From Malacoraja senta (taxonomy: Eukaryota), in NCBI GenBank assembly GCA_038087875.1, contig CM075981.1, positions 1,302,001-1,366,000 on the forward strand: a stretch of DNA of 64,000 bases, in the 5' to 3' direction. The translations under genes and the position numbers were made by a program. Shown piece after piece: positions 3,551 to 56,519 of the stretch (position 1 is the first letter of the stretch; each line of letters begins with the position of its first letter). The notes beneath the pieces were generated by a model that worked only from the letters and a program-made list of their open reading frames with translations, was not told the origin of the DNA and ran no database searches.

Positions 3551-3574
3551 GTAGGATTTCTTGTCATCATGATC

Positions 3575-4604: not shown

Positions 4605-4610
4605 AATAAA
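4605..4610 (+). terminator. Candidate polyadenylation signal of the upstream paralog
   Basis: AATAAA followed by GT-rich sequence; homologous to 42912..42917. Confidence 0.5.
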
Positions 4611-19737: not shown

Positions 19738-19786
19738 ATGGATAAAACAATGTGGATTCCAATTCTTCTCATCTCCTCGCTACCCG
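19738..19786 (+). CDS. Leader (signal peptide) exon (MDKT)MWIPILLISSLP
   Basis: ATG TGG ATT CCA ATT CTT CTC ATC TCC TCG CTA CCC G followed by a consensus donor GTGAGT at 19787. Phase 1 joins to V1 to give ...SLP-VSGA, a normal signal-peptide end. Confidence 0.85.
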
Positions 19787-22700: not shown

Positions 22701-25700
22701 TGGTCCTGTGTAATGAAGCAGGATTAATTAAAAATGTCATAGTTAGGGACTCGTAGGGAACAAGTGACCACAATATGGTCGAATTCCATATTCAAATAGA
22801 AGGGGAGCAGGTTGAAACTCAGGCTAGGGTACTTAGTCTAAATAAGGGGGATTATGAAGGTATGAGGACGGAGCTGATCAAAGTTGACTGGGATAGCAGA
22901 CTCAAGAATAAGACGGTACATGAGCAGTGGTGTACGTTTAAGGATCTACTGTATAACCTTCAAGAAAAATTTATTCCTATGAAGAAAAAAAGGGGTAAGG
23001 GAAAGAACAGTCAGCCATGGCTCAGTAAAACTATAAAGGATAGTATTCGGCTGAAGGCAAGGGCATATAAGGTAGCCAGAGATAGTGGGAGGGTAGAGGA
23101 TTGGGAAGCATTTAAAGGTCAGCAAAAAATAACTAAGAGATTAATTAAGACGGGGAAAATAGACTATGAAAGGAATTTAGCGAACAACATAAAAACTAAT
23201 AGTAAGTGTTTTTATAGCTATATAAAAAGAAAAAGGGTGGCTAAGGTGAACGTTGGTCCATTGGAGGGTGAGACTGGAGAGTTGTTGGTGGGGAACATGG
23301 AAATGGCAAAGGCATTAAACGAGTATTTTGTATCAGTCTTCACCATAGAAGACACAAAAAATATTCCAACGCTGGATAAACAGGGGGCGGTAGGAATGGA
23401 GGAGCTAAATACCATTAAGATCACCAAGGAGGTGGTATTAGGGAAATTAATGAGACTGAAGGAGGATAAATCCCCTGGGCCTGATGGATTACATCCAAGG
23501 GTCTTGAGGGAGATAGCGGTGGGGATTGTGGATGCATTGGTGATAATTTTCCAAAACTCCCTGGAGGCAGGAACGGTCCCAGTGGATTGGAAAATGGCCA
23601 ATGTAACACCTATATTTAAAAAAGGAAGTAAACAGAAGGCGGGTAACTATAGACCGGTTAGTCTAACATCGGTGGTGGGTAAAATGTTAGAGACAATTAT
23701 TAAAGAAACACTAACGGGGCACTTGGATAAACATGACTTCATCGGACAGAACCAGCATGGTTTTGTGAAGGGGAAGTCCTGTTTGACAAATCTGCTCGAA
23801 TTCTTTGAGGAAGTAAATACCCGGGTGGATAAAGGGGAACCGGTGGATGTGGTATACTTGGACTTCCAAAAGGCTTTTGACAAGGTGCCACATAAGAGAC
23901 TATTGCTAAAAATAAAAAATTATGGGATTGGGGGTAATATATTAGCATGGGTAGAGGATTGGCTAACAAATAGGAAGCAGAGAGTGGGGATAAATGGTTC
24001 ATACTCGGGATGGCAACCGGTAACTAGCGGGGTTCCGCAAGGGTCGGTGTTGGGACCCCAGTTGTTCACAATTTATATAAATGATTTGGAGGAGGGAACC
24101 AAGTGTAATATATCAAAATTTGCGGACGATACAAAAATGGGAGGAAAAGTAGGGGATGAGGAGGATAGGAAGAGTCTGCAAAAGGATATAGATAAGCTAG
24201 GTGAGTGGGCAACAACTTGGCAGATGAAATTTAATACTAATAAATGTGAAGTCATTCACTTTGGGGAAAAAAATGATAGGGCAAGTTATTTTCTAAATGA
24301 GGTGGAGCTGCGTTGTAATGCAACGCAAAGGGATCTAGGGGTAGTAGTACATGAATCACTAAAAGTTAGTATGCAGGTGCAGCAAGCAATCAGGAAGGCC
24401 AATGGAGTTTTGGCCTTTATTGCTAGGGGGATTGAGTATAAAAACACGGAGGTCTTGCTGCAGCTGTACACAGTATTAGTGAGACCACATTTGGAATACT
24501 GTGTACAGTTCTGGGGTCCATACTTAAGAAAGGATGTACTGGCCCTGGAGGCAGTGCAGCGAAGGTTTACAAGATTAATTCCTGCAATGAGGGGATTGAC
24601 ATATGAGGAAAGGTTAAGTAGGCTGGAACTCTACTCTTTGGAGTTTAGAAGAATGAGAGGCGATCTCATTGAAACATATAAGATCGTGAGGGGCCTTGAT
24701 CGGGTGGATGCACCGAGGATGTTCCCAATGATCGGGGAAACTAGAACTAGGGGACATAGTTGTAGAATAAGGGGGGGCTCTTTTAAAACTGAGATGAGGA
24801 AGAACTTCTTCACCCAGAGGGTGGTTAATTTATGGAATTCACTGCCCCAGGGAGCAGTGGAAGCAGAAACATTAAATATATTTAAGTCTAAAATAGATGG
24901 TTTTTTAGCTGCCAAGGGGATAAGGGGCTACGGGGAGAAGGCAGGGATATGGACCTAGGTATGGTTAGTATAGTAAGACCTGAGTGATCTCCTGGACAAG
25001 TGTCGATCGCCTGGATTGGGGTCGGAGAGGAATTTCCCGGATTTTTTTCCCGAATTGGACCTGGGTTTTTATCCGGTTTTTTGCCTCCCCCAGGAGATCA
25101 CGCGGTTCTTGGGGTGGAGAGGGGTGATAGCGGTATAAAGGGGAGGGTAGTGTCTTGTGTTCTGTGTCTTGTGTCTACTGTTTGTGGGTAAGGGTGTCTG
25201 TTTAGTGTTCAGCCATGAGCGAATGGCGGTGCGGGCTCGGTGGTCTACTCTCGCACCTACTTTCTATGTTTCTATGTTTCTATGTACTGACCCGGGGACA
25301 GATCACTGACACAATTGGTACAATAACAGCACTGCCTGCACTTCAGACCGGAGACATTGGTCGGGAAGCAATATGACACATAATGGAATGATTTAATCTT
25401 CAAAATGTATATATTTCCATTAAAAAACAGTTCATTTGCTCTCCATCTGAAATTTTCTCCCTTCAGTTTCAGGTGCAAGGTGGGAACCGAAGCATGTAAG
25501 AGGTGTTGTGGGACGAGCGTTCACAATCGATTGTCACTATGAAGCACGGTACCGGTCAGACACAAAATACTGGTGCCGTGGGTGGAGTCGCCGGTGTACA
25601 GTTTTAGTGAAAACAAATGGGCTACACGGACGGAGTGGAAGAGTGTCAATCACAGATAAACCGGCACTAGGAATATTTACTGTGACTGTGGAGGATCTTC

Positions 25701-28700
25701 AATATGGAGATACAGGATGGTACAACTATGGAATTGCAACATCTTTCGAGGATCCATTGTTTCCCGTACATCTCCAAGTATCTGACGGTACGTTTCGCAG
25801 CGATTGACTTGACGTCTCTACTAAAATGCCTGATCCATGTTTTCACCGGGAAGGGTCAGGGCAGCACCGATATCCCGAGGCGCTGCAGCAGTGCAGAGGC
25901 CTGCGGGGAGCGGGCGGGGGTCGGGAAACCCCACTCATGTTGCTCTCACCCAGTGCGGGCTCTGGCCCACTGAGCGGCCACCCACTTCAAGTGGGATGCT
26001 CAGCACATTTCCCTTCCTCTAAACTGTATGAAATGTCACCCTGTCAGATGTTTGCATTCCGACTCAAACTAATAATCCGACAGATCAGTGAGAAACAATT
26101 GGGCGGGAAACGGCCAGCCCGTTTCCCGCCCACACCTCAGGGATCAGTCACCCCCTCCCCACCCCGCGCTTTCCCTCTCTCCCTCTTCCCCTACAATGCG
26201 CCCCCACCCCCATCAGCCACTGTCCACCCACTGCCACGCAGCCTCTCCACCCGGACATTTCCCCGGTTTTAACCAGAATAAACTCATCTATCAGCCCATC
26301 AGCCCAACTCCCTGGTCAACGACTCGTCCTTTCCCACCCAAACCAACCTGTCCCCAGGTACGTTCCCCTACAACTGCAGGAGATGCAACACCTGTCCCTG
26401 TACCTCCCCTCTCTACTCCGTTCAAAGAACCCAACAGTCTTTTCGGGTGAGGCAGATGTTCACTTGCATCTCCTTCCACCTCATCTACTAAATCCGCTGA
26501 TCCAGGTGTGAACTCCTATATATCGGTGAAACCGAGCGCAGACACGGAAATCGTTTCGCTGAACAACTCCGCTCAGTCTGCCTCGGCCTACGCTACTTAC
26601 CGATTGCTAAACACTACCAACACTTCCCCCTCCTATTCCCAAACAGACCTTTCTGTCCTGGACCTCCTCCACTGTCAGAGTGAGGCCAAACGCAAATTGG
26701 AGGAAGAGCACCTCATATTTCGCTTTGGCAGCTTACAACCCATCGGTTTGAATATTGACTTCTCTAACTTCAAGTAACCTTTGGTCTACTACTGTCTCCA
26801 TCCCGCCCCCATCCTCGTCTCTCATTAGTTTCACTGTCATCCTGATTTAGTTTACAGATTGTATGCCTTGTTGTCACATTCCCTTCAGCTGACAATGATC
26901 CATTCTACATTTTCCTCTAGCATTTTCACCTTTGATCACTTGTTTCCACACCTGACCTTTCCATTTCTCTTCTGTCCCTGTCCCATGACTCTCGGGCTGA
27001 AAAAGGGTCTCGACCCGAAACGTCACCCATTCCTTCTCTCGAGAGATGCTGCCTGCTCCACTGAGTTACTCCAGCATTTTGTGCCTATCTTAAAGGGATC
27101 GTAAATAGTTTTCCGCAGCAGAGATGGTTAAGTATGTGTAGACATGTAATGGGGGAAATGGAACTCAGTGCATTGTGGTGATGGATCTGAAATCACATTT
27201 GAATATCTAGACTATGTTCGTAGTTTTACCACTGTTGACACATGGTCTAATTGCATCCTGATGATAGTTGATCGGCATAAAATAGGGAATGAATTTGGAG
27301 CATATAATCCAAGACACCTTGACCGAAGGACAGAGGTTTCAACACCACCAGGAAGTTAATTCTACACTTTTAAAATATGTTTACAACTGAGGTGGAACAG
27401 GACTGTCGTCTCATTGTGTCAGTTCAAATATTCCCCGCATTTGTCCGGCTCAACTCTTGTCGCAAACCCAACAATTCCCCGGAGTCTGAGACTGAACCAC
27501 TGTCCTCGCTCGATTCACCCACCCCCAACTCTCTCTCCATCATCTCTCCGATCCGCGGCCCAGTCGTGCTGAAATGTCCAGGGCAAGCCGGGGTCATTGG
27601 GAATAGAACATGTTCCCGATGAGCAGCTACCCATTTGGCTCCTAATTCAGTTTAGTTTATTGTCACATGTACTGAGATACGGTGAAATGCTTTTTTGTTG
27701 CGTGCTAACCAGCCTGCAGAAAGCAATACGTGATTACAATCGAACCTCTTACAGTGCGTAGATACATGAAAAGGAAATAACGTTAAGTGTAAGGTAAAGC
27801 CGGCAAAGTCCGATCAAGTGTCGTCCGAGGTTCATCAAAGGGGTAGATAAAAGTCTAGCACTTCTCTCTGTTTGTGATACAATGATTTTGATACCTGATA
27901 ACAGCTGGGAGAAACTGCCCCCGAATCTGTTTATCACTCACCGAAAGTAAGCATGCAGGTGGAGCAGGCAGTGAAGAAAGCTAGTGGCATGTTGGTCTGC
28001 ATAACAAGATGAGTTAAGTTTGGGATCCTTCTGCAGTTGTACAGGGGCCTAGTGAGACCACATCTGGAGCTTTGTATGCCGTTTTGAACAACAAATTTGC
28101 GAATTCTGGATGATCAGCGATGATCACATTGAATGGCGGTGCTGGCTTGAAGGGCCGAATGGCCTACTCCTACACCTATTGTCTATTCATTAATTGTCTA
28201 TTATTGCACCTAAAGCTTATATATTACGTTTTGATATGTATTTTATGGTATTTTTATATGCAATGTGTTTTATGTGATGTCGTCCGTCGTCTGGACCTTG
28301 AGTCCGATATAAAGTTTAATAATAATAATAATAATATTTGTACATCTCCATCATGCCCGTTGCCAGAACTGCCATGTCTGCCACTATACCAGTGCACAGC
28401 AGAACCATCTCTCTCTCTCAGAAAGCTCCTTCTCCTTACAATTTATCAGATTTACAGGGCCCTTCAGTTGTACAGGGCCCTAGTGAGACCACACCTGGAG
28501 TTTTGTGTGCAGTTTTGAACTGCAGATTTGAGGAAGGACATTTTTGCTATNNNNNNNNNNNNNNNNNNNNNNNNNNNNNNNNNNNNNNNNNNNNNNNNNN
28601 NNNNNNNNNNNNNNNNNNNNNNNNNNNNNNNNNNNNNNNNNNNNNNNNNNNNNNNNNNNNNNNNNNNNNNNNNNNNNNNNNNNNNNNNNNNNNNNNNNNN

Positions 28701-31700
28701 NNNNNNNNNNNNNNNNNNNNNNNNNNNNNNNNNNNNNNNNNNNNNNNNNNNNNNNNNNNNNNNNNNNNNNNNNNNNNNNNNNNNNNNNNNNNNNNNNNNN
28801 NNNNNNNNNNNNNNNNNNNNNNNNNNNNNNNNNNNNNNNNNNNNNNNNNNNNNNNNNNNNNNNNNNNNNNNNNNNNNNNNNNNNNNNNNNNNCTCCACCT
28901 CTCATATTGAAAAGCAAGGCCAATCTAAAATTGAGCAAGAGAACATTATACCTGTTAGAGAAACTGGGCGCAGTGGTTTCCTGATGATTGTTTTCGGGTG
29001 TTACTTTTGTATTTGAAGTAAACGCTATAGTTGTTAACGACTCACTAATAGATTCAGGTTCTGTTGATAAAAGGAAATAAAAGACAATTAAAGATAGACA
29101 AAAAATGCTGGAGTAACTCAACGGGACAGGCAGCATCTCTGGAGAGAAGGAATGGGTGAAGCACTGCCTGCACTTCAGACCGGAGACCGTCAGACTGGCT
29201 GTGAAGCAATATGACACATCATGGGACGATTTAAGTTTTCTTTATATAATTTTCAAAATGTATCTACTTTCATGAATCAGTTCAATTCCTCTCAGTTCTG
29301 AAAGTTTCCCCTTTCAGTTTCAGATGCAGTGAAGGGAGAGACGTATGTAAGAGGAGTTCTGGGAAGAGCGATCACAATCGATTGTAACTATGCAGCAGAG
29401 TACCGCTCACACACAAAATACTGGTGCCGTGCTCGGACTCACCAATGTTCAGATATGGTGGAAACAAATGGGCAACACGGACGGAGTGGAAGAGTGTCAA
29501 TCACAGATAACCCGGCACGAGGAATATTTACTGTGACTGTGGAGGATCTTCACTCTGGAGATACAGGATGGTACAGATGTGGAATTACTACACCTGGCGA
29601 CCATCCAATGTTTCCCGTACATCTCGAAGTATCTGATGGTACGTTTCGCAGCGATTGACTTCATGTCTCCACTGAAATGCCTGATCCATGTTTTCGCCGG
29701 GAAGGATCAGGGCAGCACCGATATCCCGAGGCTCCGCAGCAGTGCAGAGACCTGCGGGGAGCGGGCTGGGGTGGGGAAACCCCCATTCATGTTGATCTCA
29801 CCCAGTGCGGGCTCTGTCCCACTGAGCGGCCACCCACTTCAAGTGGGACGCACAGCACATTTCCCTGCCTCGGAACTGTATGAAATGTCACCCTATCAGA
29901 GGTTTGCAATCCGACTCAAACTAATAATCCGACAGATCAGTGAGAAACAAGGGTTGCTCGCGTTCTGAATACCCAGAGATTTTCTTTTAAAGGGAATCAG
30001 TCCCCAGAGCTCAACAGACTGCGTTCAGTCCTCTCGGGGCAGACCAGCCCGCTTCCCGCTTCCTCCCCACCCCGCTCGCTCTCTTTCCCTCTGTCCCGTC
30101 AATGCGCCCCGAGGCCCAGCAGCCACTGTTCACCCACCGCCCGGCAGCCAGCCAGTCTCTCCACCCAGACATTTGCCCGGTGATAAGCAGAATAACCTCA
30201 TCTTTCGCCACATCAGCCGTCGCATACAAGATATAATCATCCGACATTTTCGCCACCTCCTACGGGATCCCACAACTAGCCACATCTTTCCATCTCCACC
30301 GCATTCAGCTTTCTGAAGAGACCGTTCCCTCCGCGACTCCCTGGTCAACTCGTCCTCCCCCCGAAGGACAGAGGTTCCAACATCACCACGAAGTTAATTC
30401 TACACTTCTAAAATGTGTTTACAACTGAGGTGGAAGTCAGGATTGTGGACTCATTATGTCAGTTCAAATATTCCCTGCATTTGTCCAACTCAACTCAATC
30501 GCAAACCGAACAATTCCTCGGAGTCTGAGACTGAACCACTGTCCCCGCTCTATCCACCCAACCCCAAATTTCTCTCCATCCTCTCTCCAATCCGCGGCCC
30601 AGTCGTGCTGAATTGTCCAGGGCGAACCGGGGTCATTGGGAATAGAACCTGTCCCCGATGAGCAGCGGGACATTTGGCTCCCAAATCAGTTTAGTTTATT
30701 GTCACGTGTACCATGGTACAGCGAAAAGCTTTTTTGTTGCGTGCTAACCAGACAGCAGAAAGACAATCCATGATTACAATCGATCCTCTTACAGTGCGCA
30801 GATACATGAAAAGGAAATAACGTTTAGTGCAAGGTAAAGCCAGCAAAGTCCGATGAAGGGAATTCCGAGGGTCATCAAAGATGTAGATAGGGGTTCAGAA
30901 CTACTCACTGTTTGTGGTATGATGATTCAGATGGCTGATAACAGCTGGGAAGAAACTGTCCTAGAATCTGACAGTGTGCGTTTTCAAGCTAGTAACGCTC
31001 TCCGGTAACGAAGCCGCTTTATTGTAAACCGCCGCCCTCTGTCCTCATTCAGGGCTATGTAAAGGCAGTGGCGGCGGTGAATGTCTAAACACGGGTCCGG
31101 CCCAGTGTCGGTTGAGAAATGAATGTTGGCAGCGCAGCCGGCGGCACCGCCATTGAAATAGCAAAGTGGGGTATTTCTGTAGGGTGAGAGGACGGGCACC
31201 GCCTGGGATTGTTGAAAGGCAGCTCCTGCAACACTGCCACGCTCCCTCAGTACCGCACTGCGATCCCAGCCGAGTTTCTGCTCAGGGATCTGGAGTGGGA
31301 AGTGAACCTAAATTGTACTGACCCGGGGACAGAACACTGACACAACTGGTACAATAACTGCACTGCCTGCACTTCAGACCGGAGACATTGTCCGTAAAGC
31401 AATATGACACATCATGGAACGATTATGATTTCTTTCGTGTAATCTTCCAAATGTATCTATTTCCAGTAAACAGTTCATTTGTTCTCCATCTGAAAGTTTC
31501 TCCCCTCCATTTCAGCTACAGTGTGGGGAGAGAGGAATGTAACAGGAGTTGTGGGAAGAGCGATCACAATCGATTGTCACTATGCAGCAGAGTACCGCTC
31601 ACACACAAAATACTGGTGTCGTGGGAGGAGTCGCCAATGTACAAATATAGTGGAAACAAATGGGCAGCACGGAGGGAGTGGAAGAGTGTCAATCACAGAT

Positions 31701-34700
31701 AACTCGGCACGAGGAATGTTTACTGTGACTGTGGACGTTCTTCACTCTGGAGATACAGGATGGTACAGCTGTGGAATTACTACATCTGGCGACCATCCAA
31801 TGTGTAACGTACATCTCCAAGTATCTGACGGTAGGTTTCGCAGCAATTGACTTGACGTCTCCACTGAAATGCCTGATCCATGTTTTCTCCGGGAAGAGTC
31901 AGGGCAGCACCGATATCCAGAGGCTCCGCAGCAGTGCAGAGACCTGCGGGGAGGGGGCGGGGGTCGGGAAACCCCACTCATTTTGCTCTCACCCAGTGCG
32001 GGCTCTGTCCCGCTGAGCGGCCACACCTCAAGGATCATCACTCCCTCCCCACCCCGCTCTCTCTCTCTCTCTCCCTCTGCCCCGTCAATGCGCCCCCACC
32101 CCCAGCAGCCACTGTCCACCCACCGCTGGCAGCCAGCCAGCCTGTCCACCCGGACATTTCCCCGGTGGTAAGCATAATAAACTCATCTTTCGCCCCATCA
32201 GCCGTCGCACACAACATATAATCCTCCAACATTTTCGCCATCTCTAGCGGAATCCCACAACTAACCGCATCTTTCCATCTCCACCGCTTTCTGCTTTCCG
32301 AAGAGACTGTTCCCTCCGCAACTCCCTGGATTACTCGTCCTCGCAGAGATGCAGATGAGCCGGTGAGATATCAACCGGACGATTCGGGCTGAGATAAAGG
32401 GCTGCTGAGATTTAGCAACTGTTTATTTGTTAACTGTTCATACAGGTGACGGAATGTTTGCTCCATTCCCACAGAACCTGTGTCTGTTCCTGTGCTCAGA
32501 TATCTGTCAGCAGCAAATGCCTCACGTCTCGGCGGCTCAGTGTCAGTGTCCTGTGAGGCTGTCGGTGGATCCCTTCCCATCCATTACACATGGTTTGAGA
32601 AGAACGAGCATTGGGTTTCAACGATCTTGAAAAGCAATCAACTGGATCTGAGTTGTGAAATCCTCGGAGGTCAAAACCGTCAATTTTACTGCACAGCCTC
32701 AAATAACCGTGGGACAAAATCCGGTGAAATGCTCAACGTGAAATTCTTCAAAGGAGCAGGAACGTGCAGTTATGTGACAGAAATCAATAATACAGGTGAG
32801 TGTTATTTTCCCGTGGGAATACTGTTTCACAATTCCTCTTGTGTTCTTGGAGCTGCTGCTTTTCGCCTTGTGGTTATGTTCGTGGGTTCTTGGTATTTGC
32901 AAACGGCATCATTGCAGCCACCGTGAGCTCATGGTGTAAAATGCGAGAGTTTGCTTGGGGGACTGGCAAATAATTGCCTGATGCTTTCACCTGGGAGCTG
33001 ATGAGCAATTTCAGCAAAGGAGAGAAATAAATGCACTTATCACAACAGGTTAAGTGCAATACATCAAATTGCTGCCTTCTGCCTTAAAAACGATTTTCTG
33101 GCTGCCGCTTAAGATCTCAAAGTCAATTTGAGAAAGAGAAATGCATTCTGTTTGGATCCATCATCATTTAAAACCAAGGATGGACAATTTCATGATCATG
33201 TTCATGATTTTATCTCTTTTAAATAAGTGTGAATCACTGGAACTTAAGTAATCTCACAAAATTAACGTGGAATCTACTTGGACGACACTCCATCAATATA
33301 ACCCTTACTTTTGTCAGATAATTTTGTATCCCAGTAGGTGTGGGAACGCTCAGATTGGAAGTCCATAAGTGTGAATGGTTTACATCAGCGAGACCAAGCG
33401 CAGCCTAGGCCAGTGCTTCTGAAACTATTTCAGCGTCGTTCACCCTTGAGTCTTTATCACAAAATTTCATTCACCCTCGACTAAATGTTCTTATGTTTTT
33501 TAGGTAATTTTCATCTTATTCTCCCTTGTGTATAATTGTATATACAATTTATATTGTCACATGAGCAAAAAATACAATTCACTCCAAAGTAATTTCATTC
33601 ACACTTGGGTGAACCATTCATCAGTTAAGAAGCATTGGTCTAGGCCACAATTTCACTGAACACTTGTGCTTGGTCTGTCATGACCCAGAATCGCGCTTGA
33701 TAGACACCCCATCCTCAACCTCCCACGCTGATACAGAGCAGCAGCAATTTGCACCATCTGCAAGATGCACTGCAGCAACTCACCAAGACTCCACCGACAG
33801 CGCCTTCCAATTGCAACAGGCTCCGTGTTCAATGCATCATTCTTCACCATTCACACCCACATTGGCTGGGAACGCCTGTGCAGATGGTGAGGGACGGTGT
33901 ACAGTATCTGTCTCTCATCGCAATCAAGGTGGAATTCAACAGTTAACAAAATGGGCGGTCTCCCCTGTGCACACTGATGTATACGATAATGTATATGTTT
34001 GTAAAAGGCTAATTTTGTTCTTCAATTCATGAAATATGTTTCCTTCAGTTTCAGGTGCTCTGTGGGCAGAGAGCGAAGTAGGCGGGGTTGTGGGAAGATC
34101 GATCTCAATCGATTGTCACTATTCAGCAGTGTATCGCTCACACATAAAATACTGGTGCCCTGGGACAAGTCGCCAGTGTACACATGTAGTGGAAACAAAT
34201 GGGAAATATGAACAAAGCGGAAGAGTGTCAATCACAGATAACCCGGCACGAAGAATATTTACTGTGACTGTGGAGGATCTTCAATCTGGAGATACAGGAT
34301 GGTACAGTTGTGGAATTACTACACCTGGCGAACCAACATTTAAAGTACATCTCCAAGTATCTGAAGGTAGGTTTCTCAGTGAGTGACTTTATGTCTCCAC
34401 TTTGGCATCCGCACAAAATATTTGGTAGGTGGGAGTCTGGTGCACAGTTCTGGTCGCCGCTTTATAAAACAAAAGATGTGAAAGGTTTGGAGAGGTTGCA
34501 GAAAATGTTCACCGCGATATTTAGTTGTCGTTTACAAATGCAACATGGAAACGGATCCTGCGGCCCACCGAGTCCACACCAACTAGCGATCTCCGGTCAC
34601 ACTAGTCCTGTTATTCCACTTTCCCATGCGCTCCCTACACACAATTCTGCAATACCGCCATTCAGACACGTCATTAATGAGGAGAAGGAGCTTTCTGCCG

Positions 34701-37700
34701 GGCAATTTAGCTGTCGCTTTGAAATGTAACATCTGAGTAGCTGACATTGTCCTCATCTGTACTGGAGTGTGTCCCTGTCGATTTCCTTCATAATTGCACT
34801 CCTGCATACACAGTTTGATTTTGAATAGACAAACGGGCAGCTTCCTTGTTGCTTTGAATGTCTGACAATGTTGCACAAACGATGCTCCCTTTTCCTGCTG
34901 GCAATTCCCGAAATGTAAAAGAGAATCCAAGATTTGTCTGATGATTTGTCTGATTTGTGGTCAGTTTTAATCACCATGTTATAGGAAAGATGCTATCGTT
35001 GGATAGGGTGCAGAGAAGACTTACAAGGATGTTGCGATGAGTTGAGGGCCAGACCTACAGGGAGGGGTTGAGCTGACTAGGACTTTATTTCTTGGAGCGC
35101 AGGAGGATGAGGTGTGATCTTATGGCAGGTACAAGATCTTGCGAGGAATAGATCGTGTAAATCCACAGGAATAGATCGTGTAAATGCGCAGGAATAGATC
35201 GTGTAAATGCACATACTCTGAGTCTTTTGCCCAAAGTACGGGGATCGAGAACCAGAGAACATTGTTTTAAGATAAGGGGGAATGATTTAACAAGAACCTG
35301 GGGGTAACGTTTTTACACAAAGGTTGGTAGGTATATGAAACAAACTGCCGACGGAAGTAGTAATGGCAGGTTTTCGCAATATTTAAGTAAAATGTGGACA
35401 GGTTCATGAATAGGATAAGTTTAGAGGGTTAAGGGCCAAACAAGTGCAGGTGGAACTAGTGTAGATTCGGCGTGTTGGTCAGTGCGTGCGAGTTAGACCG
35501 AAGGGCCTGTTTCTACGCTACATGACTCTATGACTCTATGTAGATGGATGGGTCAGTTTCCAACATGGCGGGTCTGGCTAAGGTACAGAGATGGTGGATA
35601 TTTGCGAGTGTTGGATTTTCAGATGTTCACTCAGTGTCTGACTGGTTGCTCCTTTCCCACAGAACCCGTGTCTGTTCCTGTACTTGGATTTCTGTCACCA
35701 GCCAATGAACCCTGTCTCAGAGGCTCAGTGACAGTGTCCTGTGAGTCGGTCCGGGGATCCCTTCCCATTAACTACAGCTGGTATGAAAAGACCCCATCTG
35801 TGGATTCAAAGATCTCAGACAGCAATGCCCTGGATCTACATTGTCAATCCTTCCAACACCAGCACCATCAATATTATTGCACGACTTCAAATCAACATGG
35901 GTTACAATCCAGTGAAATGGTCAACGTGTCCATCTCCAGCAGTGACGTGCCCTGCAGTATTCTAGCGAAAATCAACGGCACTGGTAAGTAGTGGAGGGAA
36001 TGTGGAGAAGAAAGGGAAGTGGTTCATAAGATCATATGATAGAAGCAGAAATAGACCATTCAATCATGGCTGATCTATCTTCCCCTCTACACCCCATTTT
36101 CCTGCCTTGTCCCCGTAGCCCCCGACGCCCTGATATCCATGCACCTTATTTAATTAATTTATCAAGATTAAAATGATGGAATTAAGGTCCATTTGTCAAT
36201 ACTTGGTTGTTGGGTTATAGAAATAGATTTCCCAGTGCTGGTGTAGGCCTGCTTCCCGGCTAGAACATCCTCTTATATTTACACAGCTTTAAACTGGGTT
36301 TGCAGTGACATCAGTCCAAGCACTTTCACTTTCCAGCATCTCCACATGACCGACGCTCAAATATGGGAAGGGAACAGAAATTATCAGTAAATGTGGCCAC
36401 AGTTAACTCCTAGAGGACTGTATCAGCTTTGGTCCACTGTGTTAATGTTGACCATTCAGTACCATCGATACTAATCCCATTTACCAGCCCCTCATCCACG
36501 GTCTTCTCAGACTTGACAATTCAAGTGTCCCCACTATCTAAGTTTAAAAATACTTCTTGCTCAGATACCCTCCAAATATTCTACTCCTTAACCCAACCCT
36601 GTGTTCTCCACTTCTTCGCACATCTGCTGCACTGATTTCCCACGAAGTACCCTGTCTCCTTTATCTTACTTTCTTTATCTTTGTTACTTTATTGTTATAG
36701 TAATGGTGCATACAACGAAATTCAGGCGCACAGCTGAAATGTACAAGATAAAAATAACCATAAAATAACATCAAAAAAGTGAGAATAATAAAAATACACA
36801 TACACACATATTCACATACGCATACACATTATGCCTACGAATGCACCCGTACCAGAATATCCATTGTGTATCGAACCGATGTTTGGTAGTTCATGTTGGT
36901 TGTTTAAAGATTTAGGTCAAAGATACAGTGCGGAAACAGGGTCCACCCCGACCAGCGATTCTCGCACATTTAACACTATCCTGCACCTACTAGCGCATTT
37001 TTTTTACATTTACCATGCCAAATAACCAATAAACATGTCGTGGGTTGGTTCAGAAGATCACAAGTGATAGAAGCCCAAATGGACCATTCAATCATGGCTG
37101 ATCTATCTTCCCTTCTTCACCTCATTCTGCTGCCTTCTCCCCATAACCCCCGACACACTGAAATCCATGCACTTTATTTAAGTAACTTGTCAAGTTTAAA
37201 ATGATGAAATTATGGCCCATTTGTCCATACTTGGTTGCTGTGCTCCAGAAATAGATTTCCCGGTGCTGGTGTAGGCCTGCCTCCTGGCTAGAACTACCTC
37301 TTATGTTTACACAGCTTTATACTAGGTTTCCAGTGACATCAGTCCAAGCAAATTCATCTACCCACCACCATCTCCACATGATCCACACACAGATATGTCA
37401 AGGGATCAGACATTATCAGTAAATGTGGCCACAGTTAACTCCTTGAGGACGTTATCAGATTTGGTCCACTGTGTTAATGTTGACCATTCAGTAGTATCGA
37501 TACTAATCCCATTTACCAGCACGTTGTGGCAATTCAGGTACCTTCACCTTCTAGAATTAAAAATATTTCTTGATACCCTTGAAATATCCTGCTCCTTAAC
37601 TTAACCGTATGTTCTCCAATTTTACACATATCTGTCGTGCACAATTTTCCAAAAATAACCTCTCTATGCTGCTCACAGTTTTGCACACCTGTAATAGGTT

Positions 37701-40700
37701 CCCCCTTCCTCACCTGTCATGCATGGAATTTTATAAAACCCTTAGCCAGCCTCTCCCCATCATTGTAATCTTTCATACCAAGCAACACTCCACTCAAGTG
37801 AAATTGCACCGTTTAGATTAGTTTATGGATACAGGCTCTTCGGACAACTGAGTACACACCGTCCAGTATTCACCAGTACACAAGTTCCATGGAGACAATT
37901 TACATAATCCAATTACCCTGCAAACCTGCACGACCTTGGAATGCGGGGGGGGACTGGATCACTTGGAGAAAACCCACGCGGTCACAGGGAGGAGGTACAA
38001 ATTCCGTACAGACAGCATCCGTAGTCAGGATCGAACCCGTGCCTCTGTCGATGTAAGGCAGCAACTCTACTGCTGCGCCACTCTGCCGTCTACACCTGGC
38101 GCCAGAGTTGTTACCAGCAATCCTGCTTGTTATCTGGACTACACTTCTTCCCACCCTGCTTCATGTAAGGACTCCATCCCCTACTCTCAATTCCTCCGTC
38201 GACGCCGCATCTGCACCCAGGATGAGGTATTCCATACCAGGGCATCGGAGATGTCCTAATTCTGCATGGAACGGGGGTTCCCCTCTTCCACCATAGATGA
38301 GGCTCGCACCAGGGTCTCTTATATACCCCGTGAATCTGCTCTCTCTCACCCCATCCGCCCACTCGTAACAAGGGCAGAGTCCCCCTTGTCCTCTCATTCC
38401 AACCTACCAGCCGTCACGTACAACAAATAATACTCCGTCATTTTCGCCACCTCCAACGTGACCCCACCACTTGCTCTTGCAACCGCAAGAAATGCTACAC
38501 TTGTCGCTTTACCTCCCCCCTTGACTTAATTCAAGAACCCAAGCAGTCTTTCCAGGTGCGGCACAGGTTCACCTGCACCTCCTCCAACCTCATTTATCGC
38601 ATCCGCGGCTCTAGATGTCAGCTGCTCTAAATCGGTGACACCAAGCGTAGGCTTGGCGATCGGTTCGCGAACACCTCCGCTCGGTTCGCAATATCCAACC
38701 TGAATTCCCGGTGGCTCAGCACGTCAACCCCCCCCCCTCCCATTCCAAATCCGACCGTTCTGTCCTGGGCCTCCTCCATGGCCAGAGTGAGGACCACCGT
38801 AAATTGGAGGAGTAGCACGTCATATTTCGCTTGGGCAGTTTGCACCCCAGCTGCATGAACATTGACCTCTAATTTCAGGTAGTCCTTACTGTCTCCTCCA
38901 CTTCTCAGCTCTCCCTCAGCCCTCTGGCTCCACCTCTTCCTTTCTTCTTCCCGCTCCCCCCCCCCCACCACACACACACATCTGTGTGAGGAAGGGTTTC
39001 GGCCCGAAAAGTTCCTTATTTCCTTCGCTCCATAGATGCTGCCTCACCCGCTGAGTTTCTCCAGCATTTTTGTCTACCTCCTGCTTGTAATGATAACATC
39101 TCCCATTTGCTACAAATCACACTGAAGATTATTTACCCTGTCTGTTAAGCCTATCAACTCCTTACATAGAATCATAGAATCATAGAATCATAGAAAGTAG
39201 GTGCGAGAGCAGACCACCAGGTCCATCGAGCCCGCACCGCCATTCGCTCATGGCTGAACACCAAACAAACAAACACCCCCACCCACAAACAGTAGACACA
39301 AGACACAGAACACAAGACACTACCCTCCCCTTTATAGCGCTATCACCCCTCTCCACCCCAAGAACCGAGTGATCTCCTGGGGGAGGCAAAAAACCGGATA
39401 AAAACCCAGGTCCAATTCGGGAAAAAAATCCGGGAAATTCCTCTCCGACCCCAATCCAGGCGATCGACACTTGTCCAGGAGATCACTCAGGTCTTACTAT
39501 ACTAACCCTACCTAGGTCCATATCCCTGCCCTCTCCCCGTAGCCCCTTATCCCCTTGGCAGCTAAAAAACCATCGGACAACCATACTCCGTTGTTTTACT
39601 GAAAAGCAGTGAAACTGACTTTTATTTCCTTTTTCCAACAGGTCATGAATATTCTTGTGAATATTCCTATGCAAGGTAAACCACAATTTTTCCAATGAAG
39701 TTACAATGTACTACTTGATGGTGTTTTGATTGGGAATGCTTTATTTGGGAGAAAGTTGTGCCTTCCTTTCACTGACATTAAATGCCGTGAGTGTATTGAT
39801 CTGAATGTACAGTGGCACAGCCTGTCGAGCCACAGCCTCACCACGCCACGAGATAGGTTTATTAGGTGCTGTCTGTGCGTGGTCTGCATGTTTTGCCTTT
39901 AATTGTGTTGGTTTCATTTAAGTGCTCCAGTTTCCTCCCAGCTCCCAAAGCTGTGCCAGTTGTAAATTGCCCCGTGTGTACAGGACAGCGGTTGAATCTG
40001 TGGAAATGGGGTGGTGCGGGGGAAGGAGGGTGTTTGACGGTGGTGGTAGTTGATGAGAAAGTGGAGAAAATAAAAAAGGGATTTACACAGGAACCGTGTG
40101 AATGTAGTTGACTGTCGGCACAGACCTGCAGGGCCAAATGGCCTGTTTCTATACTGTGTTTCTCTATGGGTCTTTGATCCAATTAAAGCAAACATCGAAG
40201 CATAATCAAATGTTGTAGGTTCCGCCATGATCACATTGAATGGCGTTGCTGGCTAAAGGGGCCAAATGGCCTACCCCTGCACCTATTGTCTATTGTGTAT
40301 TGTCTATTATTTCATTTGCCTGACACCAAATATAAATTTATCTCTTAAATATTCTTTAATAATATGTATATAACTTGCAAACCAGTTATGATTTAACTCT
40401 TCAGAAGGGGCTTTACACCGGGTTTACGTCTCATTGTGTTTTGTATATGCTTGGATGATAAGAACAAGTTCCTCCATTTGCTGCTTTTCCGAGCGCGTTC
40501 CCTGCAGAATTCACCATGGCTTCTCCATCACTGACCTCATCGCAAGCTGTGAGATGAATATAGTTGCCAAACCCAAGTCTTGCAGTTTAGCTTTCCTGTG
40601 ACGCTGTGGTGTGGTGCTGATAGGAAAATGCATTGTGAATTATGGGCTTAGACACCCCCCTTGATATCACTTGTGGCAACACCTTGCCATTGATGGAGTC

Positions 40701-42509
40701 ATGCACCAAAAAATCGCTGGCGTAGAATGTGAGAAAACAGTCTTGAATCAGACGGAATACAGCGAACTGAGTTAACACACGCTCTCTTACACATTGAACA
40801 ATGAAAGCATTAAAAATAAATATCCCTGAATATTCCATCAAAATATAGTCATGAAAGTGGGAACAGTTTGTTATTTATCTTATTACAATTGAAATAGATC
40901 TGGCTTTCTATCACACTCTTGTGTTATGCTTGCGTTAGGAAATAAGAACATTAATAAAAGCCACGCCGTTATGAGCGAATCTTTAACCGATTTTTCGAAC
41001 ACGATTCCTTCATGCACACACCTACCGCGTTAATCCAAGTTATATCGAGGGTGTGAGATTAAGCATTATCATTTTTAATTTATTTTATTACTTGGCCTCA
41101 TCTGTTTCCATATTTATTGCCCCACCTCCCTTCCACCATCAGAATTGATCCCTTTTTATTATTCCTGCCTATCCATATGGATTTTATTATAATCTTCCTT
41201 GCAGCTGCATTTTCTTTCTTCCACGGTATTACACTGTTCTTTGTATCCTTACACATGCCCAGATTCCCCCTCTCGTGACTCCTAGTCTGACGAATGGTCT
41301 TGACCCGAAACATCATACATGGGGTCGTGCACCAAAAATGCGCTGGCACAGAAAGTGAGAAAACAGTCTTGAATCAGACCGAATACATCGATATGTTTTA
41401 ACTGACGCTCTCTTACACATTGAACCTTGAAACCTCCCTCGTTGTGTTTCTCCAGCATTTTGTGTCTATCTACTCTGGATTCACTGCTCCATCTAATGAC
41501 TTATTTCTGTCTTCTCCGAATCCATTTAACCGTGTTATCTCTCATTCCCAGCCTTGCAGCAATGAGATCAGTAATTGGTGATCATAAGTTGTCCCCACAC
41601 CGCCCCAGTCCAACACCCGTTCTTTCTCCAAGCTGATCTCCATTGGCTCTGCTGCTTGGCCCCGCTCCACTTCACCAAGATTATGAAGCAAATAACAGGT
41701 ATATGTTTCAAAGATAAACAGTATCGTTTCCTCCCAGTGATTCTGCATCTCTTGCCCTTTGCCTAGTTACATCGCATGGAATGTGGGGCGCTGGATGTTC
41801 TTTCTCCTGCTTGTGATCTGGAGTATCTCAACCGCGGTGTTCACAAGAGGCTCTAATGTAGGATTTCTTGTCATCATGATCATAAATTATAGGAGCAGAA
41901 TTGGGCCATTCAGCCCATTATATCTAATCCGCCTCAAATCATGGCTGATCTATCCTTCCCTCTCGATCCCATTCACCTTCATTCTCCCCATAACCCTTGA
42001 CATTCTTATTTATCAAGAATATGAAAATCTCTGCCTTAAAAATATCAATAGATTTGGATAGATCCAAAATACTGGAGTAGCACAGCGGGACAGGCAGCAT
42101 CTCCGGTGTGAATTGACTTGGCCTCCACAGCCATCTGTGGTAATGAAATCCATAGATTCACCACCCTCTGACGAAAGCAATCCCTTCTCTTCGCCGAATG
42201 TATCTAAACGGTTTCCATTAATTCTTTCAAATATCCTGTGCTTTGATAGAAACAAAAACCGTGCACGTTTTCATATCCTGACGTCAAATCAAATATCCAT
42301 GTAGATGATATCACGAGGTTGCGTGCAGGGTGGATTTCTGTGCCCGGTATGGGTTCGTTGGGGTCCATCTTCCAGCCAGCAATGTGTTGGGAGTGGTCGG
42401 TTCAAATAAAGCGTGGTTCCCACTGTCAATGAGTCTGATGACTTCACATTGTCTTTTGCAGAGACGCGATGAGTCTGAACCTCGGCACTTGGCCCACGAA
42501 TTACAATGA
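19738..42509 (+). CDS. Spliced gene model: six-Ig-domain CD300/pIgR-like (MDIR-like) type I membrane receptor, L-V-V-V-C2-V-C2-stalk-TM-short tail, about 708 aa
   Basis: Hand-built join: 19750..19786 (in-frame upstream ATG at 19738), 25467..25787, 29318..29638, 31516..31830, 32475..32795, 34049..34366, 35663..35983, 39642..39675, 41767..41857, 42462..42509. All introns are GT-AG. Junctions are phase 1 through the Ig exons, then phase 2 and phase 0. Total 2127 nt = 708 codons plus stop, with no internal stop. Exon connectivity is inferred, and extra small stalk exons cannot be excluded. Confidence 0.7.
20668..25282 (+). mobile_element. Full-length CR1-clade LINE, nearly intact, in intron 1
   Basis: TSD TGTACT at 20662..20667 and 25283..25288; empty site at about 57396..57401. 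ORF1 (21020..21974) has a CxxC..CxxC finger, leucine zipper and SGNH esterase (GDSII, HVGTND, DGLH) with a +1 frameshift in a G7 run at 21873..21879. ORF2 (22082..24958) has APE endonuclease and RT (FADD) with a single in-frame TAG at 22754..22756. Tail (TTTCTATG)3. Confidence 0.96.
25467..25787 (+). CDS. V1 exon, V-set Ig domain of CD300/pIgR type; canonical F-strand Cys replaced by Tyr
   Basis: CTTCAG acceptor, GTACGT donor, 321 nt, phase 1-1. Translates VSGARWEPKHVRGVVGRAFTIDCHY...KYWCRGWSRRC...GRVSITD...FTVTVEDLQYGDTGWYNYG...VHLQVSD. The WC-x5-C second disulfide is the CD300/pIgR/TREM signature. Confidence 0.9.
26270..27090 (+). mobile_element. Penelope-like fragment in the V1-V2 intron (duplicate at 58380..59200)
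   Basis: RFTCISFHLIY.IR.SRCELLYIGET...KLEEEHLIFRFGSLQP.GLNIDFSNFK followed by the terminal repeat. Confidence 0.85.
27945..28550 (+). mobile_element. Scrambled CR1 RT/3' fragments next to an N block (duplicate 60052..60657)
   Basis: Two partial LQLYRALVRPHLE segments and a CR1 3' UTR piece. Confidence 0.7.
28551..28892. other. N block, 342 bp
   Basis: Undetermined or masked bases. Confidence 1.
29318..29638 (+). CDS. V2 exon, V-set Ig domain of CD300/pIgR type
   Basis: TTTCAG acceptor, GTACGT donor, 321 nt, phase 1-1. IDC...YWCRARTHQC...DTGWYRC with all four cysteines present (ORF 29329..29658). Confidence 0.92.
30150..30360 (+). mobile_element. Short Penelope-like linker fragment (related copies at 32130..32340 and 63310..63520)
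   Basis: DIIIRHFRHLLRDPTT.HIFPSPP.SAF.RDRSLRDSLV-type sequence between RT and GIY-YIG. Confidence 0.7.
31516..31830 (+). CDS. V3 exon, V-set Ig domain with an extra Cys
   Basis: Only the distal of the two tandem AG acceptors survives (ccatttcag). GTAGGT donor, 315 nt, phase 1-1. IDC...YWCRGRSRQC...DTGWYSC...PMCNV. Confidence 0.9.
32475..32795 (+). CDS. C2a exon, C2/I-set Ig domain (Fc-receptor-like)
   Basis: CCCACAG acceptor, GTGAGT donor, 321 nt, phase 1-1. EPVSVPVL...VSVSCEAVGGSLPIHYTWF...FYCTASN...TCSYVTEINNT; the GSLPI.Y.W motif is typical of FcR-like C2 domains. Confidence 0.9.
34049..34366 (+). CDS. V4 exon, V-set Ig domain of CD300/pIgR type
   Basis: CCTTCAG acceptor, GTAGGT donor, 318 nt, phase 1-1. 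VSGALWAESEV...IDC...YWCPGTSRQC...DTGWYSC. Confidence 0.92.
35663..35983 (+). CDS. C2b exon, C2/I-set Ig domain, intact
   Basis: CCCACAG acceptor, GTAAGT donor, 321 nt, phase 1-1, open frame EPVSVPVLGFLSPANEPCLRGSVTVSC...YYCTTSN...VPCSILAKINGT. Confidence 0.9.
38127..39080 (+). mobile_element. Penelope-like element fragment (duplicate of 229..1162)
   Basis: Same RT and GIY-YIG remnants, with additional stops. Confidence 0.88.
39168..39570 (-). mobile_element. 403 bp 3' fragment of the same CR1 subfamily as the 20668 element, antisense, copy-B specific
   Basis: Reverse complement of about 24897..25280 with an (ATTCTATG)n tail. CAT duplicated at 39165..39167 and 39571..39573. Empty site ttacatcggac at about 1247..1257. 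Confidence 0.92.
39642..39675 (+). CDS. Cys-containing stalk mini-exon (G)HEYSCEYSYA
   Basis: Polypyrimidine tract plus CCAACAG acceptor and AAG|GTAAAC donor. 34 nt, phase 1-2. Homologous to 1326..1374 with an in-frame 15 nt deletion. Confidence 0.65.
41767..41857 (+). CDS. Transmembrane exon (S)YIAWNVGRWMFFLLLVIWSISTAVFTRGSN
   Basis: CTTTGCCTAG acceptor in phase 2, matching the mini-exon. Hydrophobic stretch of about 22 aa with an Arg near its N-terminal end. Donor AAT|GTAGGA is weak at the -1 position. Confidence 0.75.
42462..42509 (+). CDS. Terminal cytoplasmic exon RRDESEPRHLAHELQ*
   Basis: GTCTTTTGCAG acceptor in phase 0, matching the TM donor. TGA stop, followed by an AT-rich 3' UTR and AATAAA at 42912. 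Confidence 0.65.
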   Translation, partial: RRDESEPRHLAHELQ

Positions 42510-56470: not shown

Positions 56471-56519
56471 ATGGATAAAACAATGTGGATTCCAATTCTT
56501 CTCATCTCCTCGCTAACCG
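56471..56519 (+). CDS. Leader exon of the downstream paralog, (MDKT)MWIPILLISSLT
   Basis: Paralog of 19738..19786; G|GTGAGT donor at 56520. Confidence 0.85.

What the first reader, a model, noticed from the sequence alone, without database searches (positions are those of the whole stretch)
19738..42509. Hidden six-domain CD300/pIgR-like receptor (V-V-V-C2-V-C2-TM) in an expanding tandem gene array
Seen in sequence: ten exons with GT-AG sites and compatible phases give an open frame of about 708 aa. It mixes four CD300/pIgR-type V domains (WC-x5-C extra disulfide) with two FcR-like C2 domains. Paralogs lie upstream (3' end at 1326..4610) and downstream (5' end from 56471), so at least three genes sit in a 33-38 kb periodic array. 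Established: skates have modular domain immune-type receptors (MDIRs) related to CD300/TREM/pIgR, and mammalian CD300s have a single V domain. Inference: this is a lineage-specific, rapidly evolving innate receptor cluster with an unusual interleaved domain order, probably split or mis-annotated by automated pipelines.
Basis: partly seen in the sequence, partly recalled or inferred. Interest (0 to 1): 0.85.

Follow-up and report, generated by a model that had tools for sequence, protein, structure and literature searches.

The report
Skate MDIR immune receptor gene, six-domain copy
This is an apparently intact gene of a skate innate immune receptor family known since 2006 (MDIR, labelled "pIgR-like" in databases); it has one extra tip domain, sits in a recently duplicated gene array, and is a new family member, not a new kind of receptor.

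Summary
Ten + strand exons (19738-42509), all with AG/GT sites and matching phases, give an open frame of 706-712 aa: leader, V1, V2, V3, C2a, V4, C2b, a 34-nt stalk microexon, TM and tail. The V exons are pIgR/CD300-type and the C2 exons are FCRL-type.

The N gap (28551-28892) lies inside the V1-V2 intron, so no frame crosses it. Continuity across it could not be tested.

The gene belongs to the skate MDIR family. Residues 226-712 are 77% identical to clearnose skate MDIR5 (V-C-V-C, same W-x-V-G-R-W membrane segment and short tyrosine-free tail). MDIR3 is V-V-C-V-C.

V/C2 interleaving is the norm in this family: 138 shark and ray relatives show it. Only the exact order V-V-V-C-V-C was not seen among them.

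V1 is atypical. It lacks the canonical second cysteine (3 of 352 relatives' V motifs do) and sits on a long branch, so whether the mRNA includes it is unproven.

The tandem array is real in the assembly: a unit of about 38 kb, copies 89-99.8% identical, and a 4.6-kb LINE in the middle copy only.

No usable RNA data were found. Earlier first-reader notes of this scan cover parts of this stretch and its neighbours.

Verdict: new member of a known kind, modest interest.

The parts
19738..19786 (+). Exon 1: start codon and signal peptide (MDKTMWIPILLISSLP), donor GTGAGT, ends in phase 1
   Evidence: Its first 16 residues are 100% identical to the leaders of MDIR3 (P0168) and two Leucoraja proteins. 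The only other copy in the window is at 56471, with 1 mismatch in 55 nt.
25467..25787 (+). Exon 2: V1, a pIgR/CD300-type V domain lacking the canonical second Cys (WYNYG). An alternative acceptor lies at 25473.
   Evidence: Pfam V-set E 1.2e-10. AG/GT sites, phase 1-1. Long terminal branch of 0.47 against a median of 0.17. Loss of this Cys is rare in relatives, 3 of 352 motifs.
28551..28892 (.). Assembly gap (N), inside intron 2 between V1 and V2. It was not filled.
   Evidence: The left flank is a LINE reverse-transcriptase C-terminal fragment (ORF 28120-28518). The next copy has a gap at the same relative place, 60658-61003.
29318..29638 (+). Exon 3: V2 (alternative acceptor at 29324)
   Evidence: Pfam V-set E 3.5e-13. 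Phase 1-1. 78% aa identity to V3.
31516..31830 (+). Exon 4: V3, probably the original first V. Its upstream intron is homologous to intron 1.
   Evidence: Pfam V-set. Best solved-structure matches are pIgR and CLM-1/CD300. 20008-20667 matches 30635-31319 at 85%.
32475..32795 (+). Exon 5: C2a
   Evidence: Pfam Ig_C17orf99/Ig_3/Ig_2. Aligns without gaps to the first C2 domain of MDIR3 and MDIR5.
34049..34366 (+). Exon 6: V4, the membrane-proximal V (alternative acceptor at 34055)
   Evidence: Pfam V-set. Falls in a supported clade (SH-aLRT 96) with the equivalent V of MDIR3, MDIR5 and other skate proteins. No leader-like exon lies upstream of it.
35663..35983 (+). Exon 7: C2b
   Evidence: Pfam Ig_2/Ig_C17orf99. 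Best solved-structure match is FCRL5, E 3.5e-39 summed over 5 stretches.
39642..39675 (+). Exon 8: 34-nt stalk microexon (HEYSCEYSYA), phase 1 to 2. It carries a 15-nt in-frame deletion relative to the upstream copy (1326-1374) and to orthologues.
   Evidence: It matches the stalk 'LEYSCE..' of P0054, MDIR3 and MDIR5.
41767..41857 (+). Exon 9: transmembrane exon (SYIAWNVGRWMFFLLLVIWSISTAVFTRGSN) with an Arg in an N-x-x-R context
   Evidence: The W-x-V-G-R-W membrane module is conserved in 32 relatives from batoids and one from a sawshark.
42462..42509 (+). Exon 10 coding part: tail RRDESEPRHLAHELQ and stop. No tyrosine.
   Evidence: First AATAAA at 42912. One contig of run X3 starts aligning at 42460, which is weak support.
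1326..4202 (+). 3' end of the upstream paralogue: stalk 1326-1374, TM 3460-3550, tail 4155-4202
   Evidence: 95.4% identical to 39571-42600.
56471..64000 (+). 5' end of the downstream paralogue: leader 56471, V1 57577-57897, V2 62481-62801. It runs off the window.
   Evidence: 98-99.8% identical to the middle copy and lacks the LINE.

Best explanation
Window 19738-42509 (+) holds an apparently intact ten-exon gene of the cartilaginous-fish MDIR family (modular domain immune-type receptors). Genome pipelines label this family 'polymeric immunoglobulin receptor-like' or 'Fc receptor-like 5'.

Shown: the gene encodes a type I membrane protein of 706-712 aa. The order is signal peptide, three tandem pIgR/CD300-type V domains, an FCRL-type C2 domain, a fourth V, a second C2, a short Cys-containing stalk from a 34-nt microexon, a membrane segment carrying an arginine (WNVGRW...), and a tail of about 20 residues without tyrosine. 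From V3 onward it is the counterpart of clearnose skate MDIR5 (V-C-V-C with the same membrane segment and tail).

Inferred: V1 and V2 were added by tandem duplication of a cassette made of the 3' part of intron 1 plus the first V exon. The whole gene lies in a tandem segmental duplication of about 38 kb.

Inferred mechanism: the ectodomain binds an unknown ligand. The receptor has no signalling motif of its own, so it would signal through an ITAM adaptor (FcR-gamma or DAP12 type) recruited by the membrane arginine. That would make it the activating partner of ITIM-bearing MDIR3-type genes in the same cluster.

Inferred isoform: skipping the microexon would shift the frame and give a secreted form ending VTSHGMWGAGCSFSCL.
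For: Gene model: open frame, canonical splice sites and matching phases.

Domain identities: Pfam and solved-structure searches.

Family: 77% identity over residues 226-712 to MDIR5 (P0186), with only 8 gap positions. 74% to MDIR3 (P0168) and 78% to an Amblyraja V-V-C-V-C protein. The C2a-to-V4 junction and the leader-to-V junction read exactly like those proteins ('NNTVSGALWAESEV', 'SSLPVSGA') when the upstream acceptors are used.

One gene, not two: there is no second leader-like exon anywhere in the window apart from 56471. There are no ITIM-tail exons on the + strand.

Membrane module: W-x-V-G-R-W plus a short acidic tail is conserved in 33 relatives with many different ectodomains, 32 from batoids and one from a sawshark.

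Cassette duplication: 25283-25981, 29161-29833 and 31314-32024 are 85-88% alike, and 20008-20667 matches 30635-31319.

Distinct tandem copies: identity ranges from 89.6% to 99.8% along the unit. A LINE with a 6-bp overlap of the flanks is present only in the middle copy. The stalk exon differs by a 15-nt indel.
Against: No transcript evidence for this gene. Runs X1 and X2 behave like DNA and show no splice joints. X3 is 'probably DNA'.

V1 lacks the canonical second cysteine, sits on a long branch, and differs from its twin copy as much as the introns do: 3 of 321 nt against 1.07%. It may therefore be skipped or decaying.

The assembly gap in intron 2 leaves the V1-V2 linkage unverified.

From memory, Cannon et al. 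2006 described MDIR5 as lacking typical activating or inhibitory motifs, so the activating reading of the boundary arginine is an inference.

Adaptor pairing and ligand are untested.
Confidence: 0.7

Rival explanations
1. The gene is real, but V1 (perhaps also V2) is a degenerating or skipped exon. The mature receptor would then have five or four Ig domains, the same ectodomain as MDIR3 (V-V-C-V-C) or MDIR5 (V-C-V-C), and the 'six-domain' protein would exist only on paper.
For: V1 has Tyr in place of the canonical Cys. Only 3 of 352 V motifs in 269 relatives lack that Cys. V1's terminal branch is 0.47 against a median of 0.17, and its best identity to any relative is 73%. dN/dS against V2 and V3 is about 1.8, compatible with relaxed constraint. 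Exon divergence between the twin copies equals intron divergence. No relative shows V-V-V-C-V-C. All Ig exons are phase 1-1, so skipping any of them keeps the frame.
Against: V1 keeps an open frame, both splice sites with a good polypyrimidine tract, the extra C-x6-C pair, and the Trp, Asp and Tyr core residues. It is the exon next to the only leader. V-V-V does occur in a stingray relative, P0212.
Confidence: 0.25
2. The periodic array, or this copy of it, is an assembly artefact (haplotypes or collapsed reads laid out in tandem), or a young unexpressed duplicate. In that case there are fewer real genes than copies.
For: Copies are up to 99.8% identical. Both carry an N gap at the same relative position. 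No RNA support.
Against: Identity varies widely along the unit, from 89.6% to 99.8%. There are structural differences: a 4.6-kb LINE, a 1-kb indel near 29207/62370, and a 15-nt exon indel. A dead C2 plus stalk fragment is shared by both units, so the unit duplicated as a block. Such clusters are large in every annotated elasmobranch. Unchecked neighbouring notes describe further family genes on both sides.
Confidence: 0.1
3. There are two separate genes: a V-V-V-C2 gene and a V-C2-TM gene whose V4 has its own leader.
For: The V4 acceptor region (TTCAG|TTTCAG|GT) looks like the one that follows the leader at V1. Two short hydrophobic ATG..GT candidates exist in intron 5, at 33180-33228 and 33485-33527. 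They were picked by pattern only.
Against: No copy of the family leader lies near V4, allowing up to 16 mismatches in 55 nt. MDIR3, MDIR5 and dozens of relatives read straight from the C2 into this V with the same 'TVSGALWAESEV' linker. C2a ends in phase 1 with a strong donor and no stop.
Confidence: 0.03

Closest known systems
MDIR5 (modular domain immune-type receptor 5) of the clearnose skate Rostroraja (Raja) eglanteria, P0186, 501 aa
   Same: 77% identical over residues 226-712 of the model. Same V-C2-V-C2 core, same Cys-containing stalk, same W-x-V-G-R-W membrane segment, and the same short tail ending ..DESEPRH.AHELQ.
   Different: The window gene has two more V domains at the tip (V1, V2) and a 5-residue shorter stalk. 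V1 lacks the canonical disulfide.
MDIR3 of R. eglanteria (P0168, 701 aa) and Amblyraja radiata 'pIgR-like' P0170
   Same: Identical leader. V-V-C2-V-C2 ectodomain 74-78% identical to model residues 124-684.
   Different: They have an uncharged membrane segment and a long cytoplasmic tail with ITIM-like tyrosine motifs (the inhibitory type), and one V domain fewer.
Mammalian CD300 / CMRF35-like molecules
   Same: The V domain type, including the extra cysteine pair after the conserved Trp (CLM-1 E 1e-17). The family logic of activating members with a charged membrane residue and inhibitory members with ITIMs (from established knowledge).
   Different: CD300 proteins have a single V domain and no C2 domains.
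Polymeric immunoglobulin receptor (pIgR)
   Same: Tandem V domains of the same subtype. It is the best solved-structure match (E 6e-53 over four stretches), hence the automatic name 'pIgR-like'.
   Different: From established knowledge, pIgR has only V-type domains and a long tail with sorting and transcytosis signals. Here C2 domains are interleaved and the tail is about 20 residues. Nothing indicates Ig transport.
Fc receptor-like proteins (FCRL1-6)
   Same: The C2 domain type (FCRL5 E 3.5e-39 over five stretches).
   Different: From established knowledge, FCRL ectodomains contain no CD300-type V domains.

Membership tests
MDIR (modular domain immune-type receptors, Cannon et al. 2006) | High sequence similarity to the named MDIR proteins | tested here: met
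   77% identity to MDIR5 and 74% to MDIR3 over 490-570 residues. MDIR2 was also recovered as a relative.
MDIR (modular domain immune-type receptors, Cannon et al. 2006) | Ectodomain built from modules of different Ig subfamilies: CD300/pIgR/TREM-like domains combined with FcR-like C2 domains | tested here: met
   Four V-set exons and two Ig_2/Ig_C17orf99 exons, each a separate phase 1-1 exon.
MDIR (modular domain immune-type receptors, Cannon et al. 2006) | Encoded by a multigene family in cartilaginous fish | tested here: met
   Parts of three tandem copies plus dead fragments lie in the window. All close relatives come from skates, rays, sharks and a chimaera. The 'skate' origin of the window rests on best hits and on this scan's notes.
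MDIR (modular domain immune-type receptors, Cannon et al. 2006) | Expressed as mRNA | tested here: inconclusive
   No RNA run holding the gene was found. X1-X3 behave as DNA.
Activating ITAM-adaptor-coupled Ig receptors (FcR-gamma or DAP12 partners) | Basic residue in the membrane segment together with a short tail lacking signalling motifs | tested here: met
   WNVGRWMFFLLLVIWSISTAVF followed by TRGSNRRDESEPRHLAHELQ, with no Tyr. The module is conserved in 33 relatives.
Activating ITAM-adaptor-coupled Ig receptors (FcR-gamma or DAP12 partners) | Physical association with, and signalling through, an ITAM adaptor | not testable with these tools
   Needs co-expression and co-precipitation experiments.
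CD300 family | Single V-type Ig ectodomain | tested here: not met
   Six Ig domains, two of them C2.
pIgR | Ectodomain made only of V-type domains, with a long cytoplasmic tail carrying transcytosis signals | tested here: not met
   C2 domains are interleaved and the tail is about 20 residues. The pIgR features themselves are from established knowledge.

The most novel reading that the evidence does not exclude
The middle gene (arginine-bearing membrane segment, no signalling tail) and the next gene downstream may form a very young activating/inhibitory pair. An unchecked note of this scan says the downstream gene continues into a triple-ITIM tail. The two genes' tips are almost identical: V1 differs at 2 residues and V2 at none. 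The tip was built by recent V-cassette duplication, and its outermost domain has dropped the canonical Ig disulfide while evolving fast (dN/dS above 1). That would be a live example of decoy/counter-decoy receptor evolution in a cartilaginous fish. A microexon would additionally act as a switch between membrane-bound and secreted forms.
Probability: 0.2. Interest if true: 0.5.

Novelty: new member of a known kind. Interest (0 to 1): 0.3.

Why it matters
It gives a clean exon-level model for one activating-type MDIR gene. It shows how the family lengthens its ectodomain, by duplicating a cassette made of intron 1 sequence plus the first V exon, and how genes multiply, by 38-kb tandem units. It also flags a 34-49-nt stalk microexon that two RefSeq models in other skates apparently miss. 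This helps anyone annotating elasmobranch innate receptor clusters. It does not open a new biological question, because the family, its modular V/C2 design and its activating/inhibitory split were described in 2006.

Tried and rejected
RNA evidence: two run searches and two read layings were used.
- X1 and X2 gave short contigs over introns and repeats with no exon-exon joints, so they behave as DNA.
- X3 (another organism) is 'probably DNA'. One 627-nt contig starts aligning at 42460, right at the tail-exon acceptor, with 210 unplaced letters before it. That fits a spliced mRNA but proves nothing.

Literature: Cannon et al. 2006 (PMID 16738934, PMC3701310) and a 2010 review (PMC2823954) are not held. 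What I say about the paper's content is from memory, apart from the mention and accession numbers in PMC3031540.

Published six-domain MDIR: MDIR1 and MDIR4 were not recovered by any of the three protein searches. I therefore could not check whether a published six-domain MDIR has this exact order.

Domain tree: the V-domain tree (58 domains, 107 columns) is mostly unresolved. Only the V4 clade and the long V1 branch are usable.

The window's own annotated protein: none appeared in the databases, so the 'mis-annotated here' claim could not be tested.

Own leader for V4: rejected.

ITIM isoform from this gene: rejected. The only ITIM-like sequence in the window is a dead antisense relic.
Full report

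Six Ig-like exons stand out as open segments on the + strand: 25467-25787, 29318-29638, 31516-31830, 32475-32795, 34049-34366 and 35663-35983. Each is bounded by AG and GT and is in phase 1 at both ends.

A leader exon lies at 19738-19786 (MDKTMWIPILLISSLP, donor GTGAGT). It ends in phase 1 and joins V1 in frame.

Downstream I located three small exons by homology to relatives:
- a 34-nt stalk microexon, 39642-39675;
- the transmembrane exon, 41767-41857;
- the tail exon, 42462-42509, which ends in TGA.

Spliced together, the ten exons give one open frame of 706 aa. Using acceptors 6 nt further upstream at V1, V2 and V4 (tandem TTCAG|TTTCAG sites) gives 712 aa and reproduces the 'VSG' linker of the MDIR3 and MDIR5 proteins.

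This is far beyond chance:
- All four V exons match Pfam V-set at E 1e-10 to 4e-13. The two C2 exons match Ig_2/Ig_3/Ig_C17orf99, though all below Pfam's curated cut-offs.
- Among solved structures, the V3 exon (the only V exon searched) matches pIgR and CD300/CLM-1 best. The C2b exon (the only C2 exon searched) matches FCRL5.

The extra cysteine pair is C-x6-C, not x5. V1 reads WYNYG where the family has WYxCG, so it lacks the canonical second cysteine.

**2. The assembly gap**

The N run 28551-28892 lies in the intron between V1 (donor at 25787) and V2 (acceptor at 29318). No codon crosses it. V1 ends and V2 begins in phase 1 regardless of what the gap holds.

- Its left flank is a LINE reverse-transcriptase fragment (ORF 28120-28518).
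- The next tandem copy has a gap at the same relative position, 60658-61003.

Whether the two flanks are truly contiguous, or whether the gap hides more sequence such as another V cassette, could not be tested here. I did not try to fill it.

**3. What the gene is**

A full-library HMMER search with the V3 exon gave 2,538 hits. The best ones are multi-domain proteins of skates, rays and sharks. RefSeq names them 'polymeric immunoglobulin receptor-like', 'Fc receptor-like protein 5' or 'uncharacterized'.

Follow-up searches recovered three proteins that UniRef names modular domain immune-type receptor 2, 3 and 5 of the clearnose skate.
- Model residues 226-712 are 77% identical to MDIR5 over its whole mature length, with 8 gap positions.
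- Residues 124-684 are 74% identical to MDIR3 and 78% to an Amblyraja radiata protein.
- The leader's first 16 residues are identical to those of MDIR3.

The gene is thus an MDIR family member. From V3 to the stop it is the counterpart of MDIR5. The MDIR family and its relation to CD300, TREM, FCAR and pIgR are stated in PMC3031540, which cites Cannon et al. 2006. The primary paper is not held in the library.

**4. Domain order**

I mapped the six window domains onto all 269 proteins retrieved up. Of these, 138 combine this V type with this C2 type. Their orders include V-C (41), V-C-V-C (31), V-C-V-C-V-C (17), V-V-C-V-C (6) and longer alternating chains of up to 12 domains.

Interleaving is therefore the family rule, not an oddity. 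The exact order V-V-V-C-V-C was not among them. The nearest are V-V-C-V-C (MDIR3 and others) and V-V-V-C (a stingray protein, P0212).

From memory, the 2006 abstract says MDIRs have one to six ectodomains. MDIR1 and MDIR4 were not retrievable, so I could not check whether that published six-domain form has this order.

**5. How the extra domains arose**

Self-comparison of the window shows three cassettes of exon plus flanking intron, 85-88% alike: 25283-25981, 29161-29833 and 31314-32024. In addition, 20008-20667 in intron 1 matches 30635-31319, just upstream of V3.

So V3 carries the old 'intron 1' in front of it, and V1 and V2 are added copies of that cassette. The leader itself was not copied.

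In a tree of 58 V domains, V4 sits in a supported clade (SH-aLRT 96) with the membrane-proximal V of MDIR3, MDIR5 and other skate proteins. V2 groups at SH-aLRT 88 (below the tool's 95 star) with domains of other skates and V3's nearest domain by path length and identity is one from another skate, in an unresolved part of the tree, so I cannot tell whether these duplications are specific to this species. V1 has a long terminal branch, 0.47 against a median of 0.17.

**6. Is V1 a working domain?**

For:
- open frame;
- good splice sites;
- retained core residues and the extra cysteine pair.

Against:
- Loss of the canonical cysteine, seen in only 3 of 352 V motifs in relatives.
- The long branch.
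- dN/dS of 1.8-1.9 against V2 and V3, which I estimate roughly, without running a test, is not significantly above 1 given about 7 synonymous differences.
- Exon divergence between the twin copies equal to intron divergence.

All Ig exons are phase 1-1, so skipping V1 would keep the frame. I put about 25% on V1 not being part of the main product.

**7. Membrane end and likely mechanism**

The membrane segment is SYIAWNVGRWMFFLLLVIWSISTAVF and the tail is TRGSNRRDESEPRHLAHELQ, with no tyrosine.

The W-x-V-G-R-W module with a short acidic tail recurs in 33 relatives, 32 from batoids and one from a sawshark. They carry ectodomains of one to nine Ig domains, apart from one visibly fused model. That argues for a conserved function of this segment.

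By analogy with mammalian receptors that carry an arginine near the outer end of the membrane helix in an N-x-x-R context and pair with FcR-gamma (established knowledge, recalled from memory), the most likely mechanism is signalling through an ITAM adaptor. MDIR3-type genes with ITIM tails would be the inhibitory counterparts. This step is inference.

There is no ITIM exon on the + strand of the window.

If the 34-nt microexon is skipped, C2b joins the TM exon out of frame and the protein ends VTSHGMWGAGCSFSCL without a membrane anchor. Two RefSeq models end exactly this way: Leucoraja erinacea P0004 and Amblyraja radiata P0005. That is either a repeated annotation miss of the microexon or a real soluble isoform.

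**8. The array**

- Window 1-26000 maps onto 37897-64000 with offsets of 32.1-38.3 kb and identities from 89.6% to 99.8%.
- The middle copy alone carries a 4.6-kb LINE (20668-25282) in intron 1. Its ORFs carry GDSL-esterase, endonuclease and reverse-transcriptase domains. The flanks overlap by 6 bp in the empty copy, like a target-site duplication.
- The stalk exon differs by a 15-nt in-frame indel between the middle and upstream copies. The TM and tail exons differ by one nucleotide each.

These differences argue for distinct loci rather than a simple assembly duplication. Only long reads can settle this.

Unchecked notes of this scan describe further family genes on both sides, including an ITIM-bearing gene that continues from the downstream copy.

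**9. Transcripts**

No RNA evidence was obtained. Support for the splice pattern comes from the colinear MDIR3 and MDIR5 proteins, which as I recall were cloned as cDNAs, and from many RefSeq models.

**10. Verdict**

This is a new member of a known family. The exact domain order was not seen among the relatives checked, but it is a small step from known ones. Interest is modest.

Noticed in passing
window 20668-25282 (+): Near full-length LINE in intron 1. ORF1 (20984-21892) has a GDSL-esterase-like domain. The endonuclease ORF is 22064-22756 and the reverse-transcriptase ORF is 22775-24958, so ORF2 is split. It is absent from the downstream copy, where the flanks overlap by 6 bp (57396-57401), like a target-site duplication. 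This looks like a young insertion.
   Followed up: partly
window 34677-34913 (-): Antisense relic of an ITIM-type cytoplasmic tail exon inside the V4-C2b intron. It is 76% identical to residues 777-855 of a Rhinoraja 'pIgR-like' protein (P0001) but has two in-frame stops. It is a trace of an old inversion or rearrangement involving an inhibitory family member.
   Followed up: partly
window 28948-29094 (-) and 61059-61205 (-): Antisense stretch right after each assembly gap, 71% identical to the stalk region (residues 687-735) of the same Rhinoraja protein P0001. Its origin is unexplained.
   Followed up: no
window 46796-47116 and 8712-9032 (+), with 48412 and 10327: Between genes, each unit carries a dead partial copy of the gene's 3' part. 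It consists of a C2b-like exon with an in-frame stop (CLGD*VTVSC) and a stalk exon with a 1-nt deletion. The TM and tail exons are deleted. Both units share it, so it predates the unit duplication.
   Followed up: yes
proteins P0004 (Leucoraja erinacea), P0005 (Amblyraja radiata), P0054 (Rhinoraja longicauda): RefSeq models of relatives look faulty. P0004 and P0005 end in the out-of-frame reading of the TM exon (VTSHGKWGAGC.FSCL), as if the stalk microexon were missed. P0004 also fuses two genes through a translated 5'UTR. P0054 fuses a TRIM ligase to a C2-V-C2-TM receptor.
   Followed up: partly
window 39173-39574 (-): An inverted 400-nt copy (94%) of the 3' end of the intron-1 LINE lies just upstream of the stalk microexon.
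   Followed up: no
model residue 327 (in V3, window about 31800): V3 has an extra cysteine (PMCNVH) near its C-terminal strand, while V1 has an unpaired first cysteine. I did not examine whether these matter.
   Followed up: no
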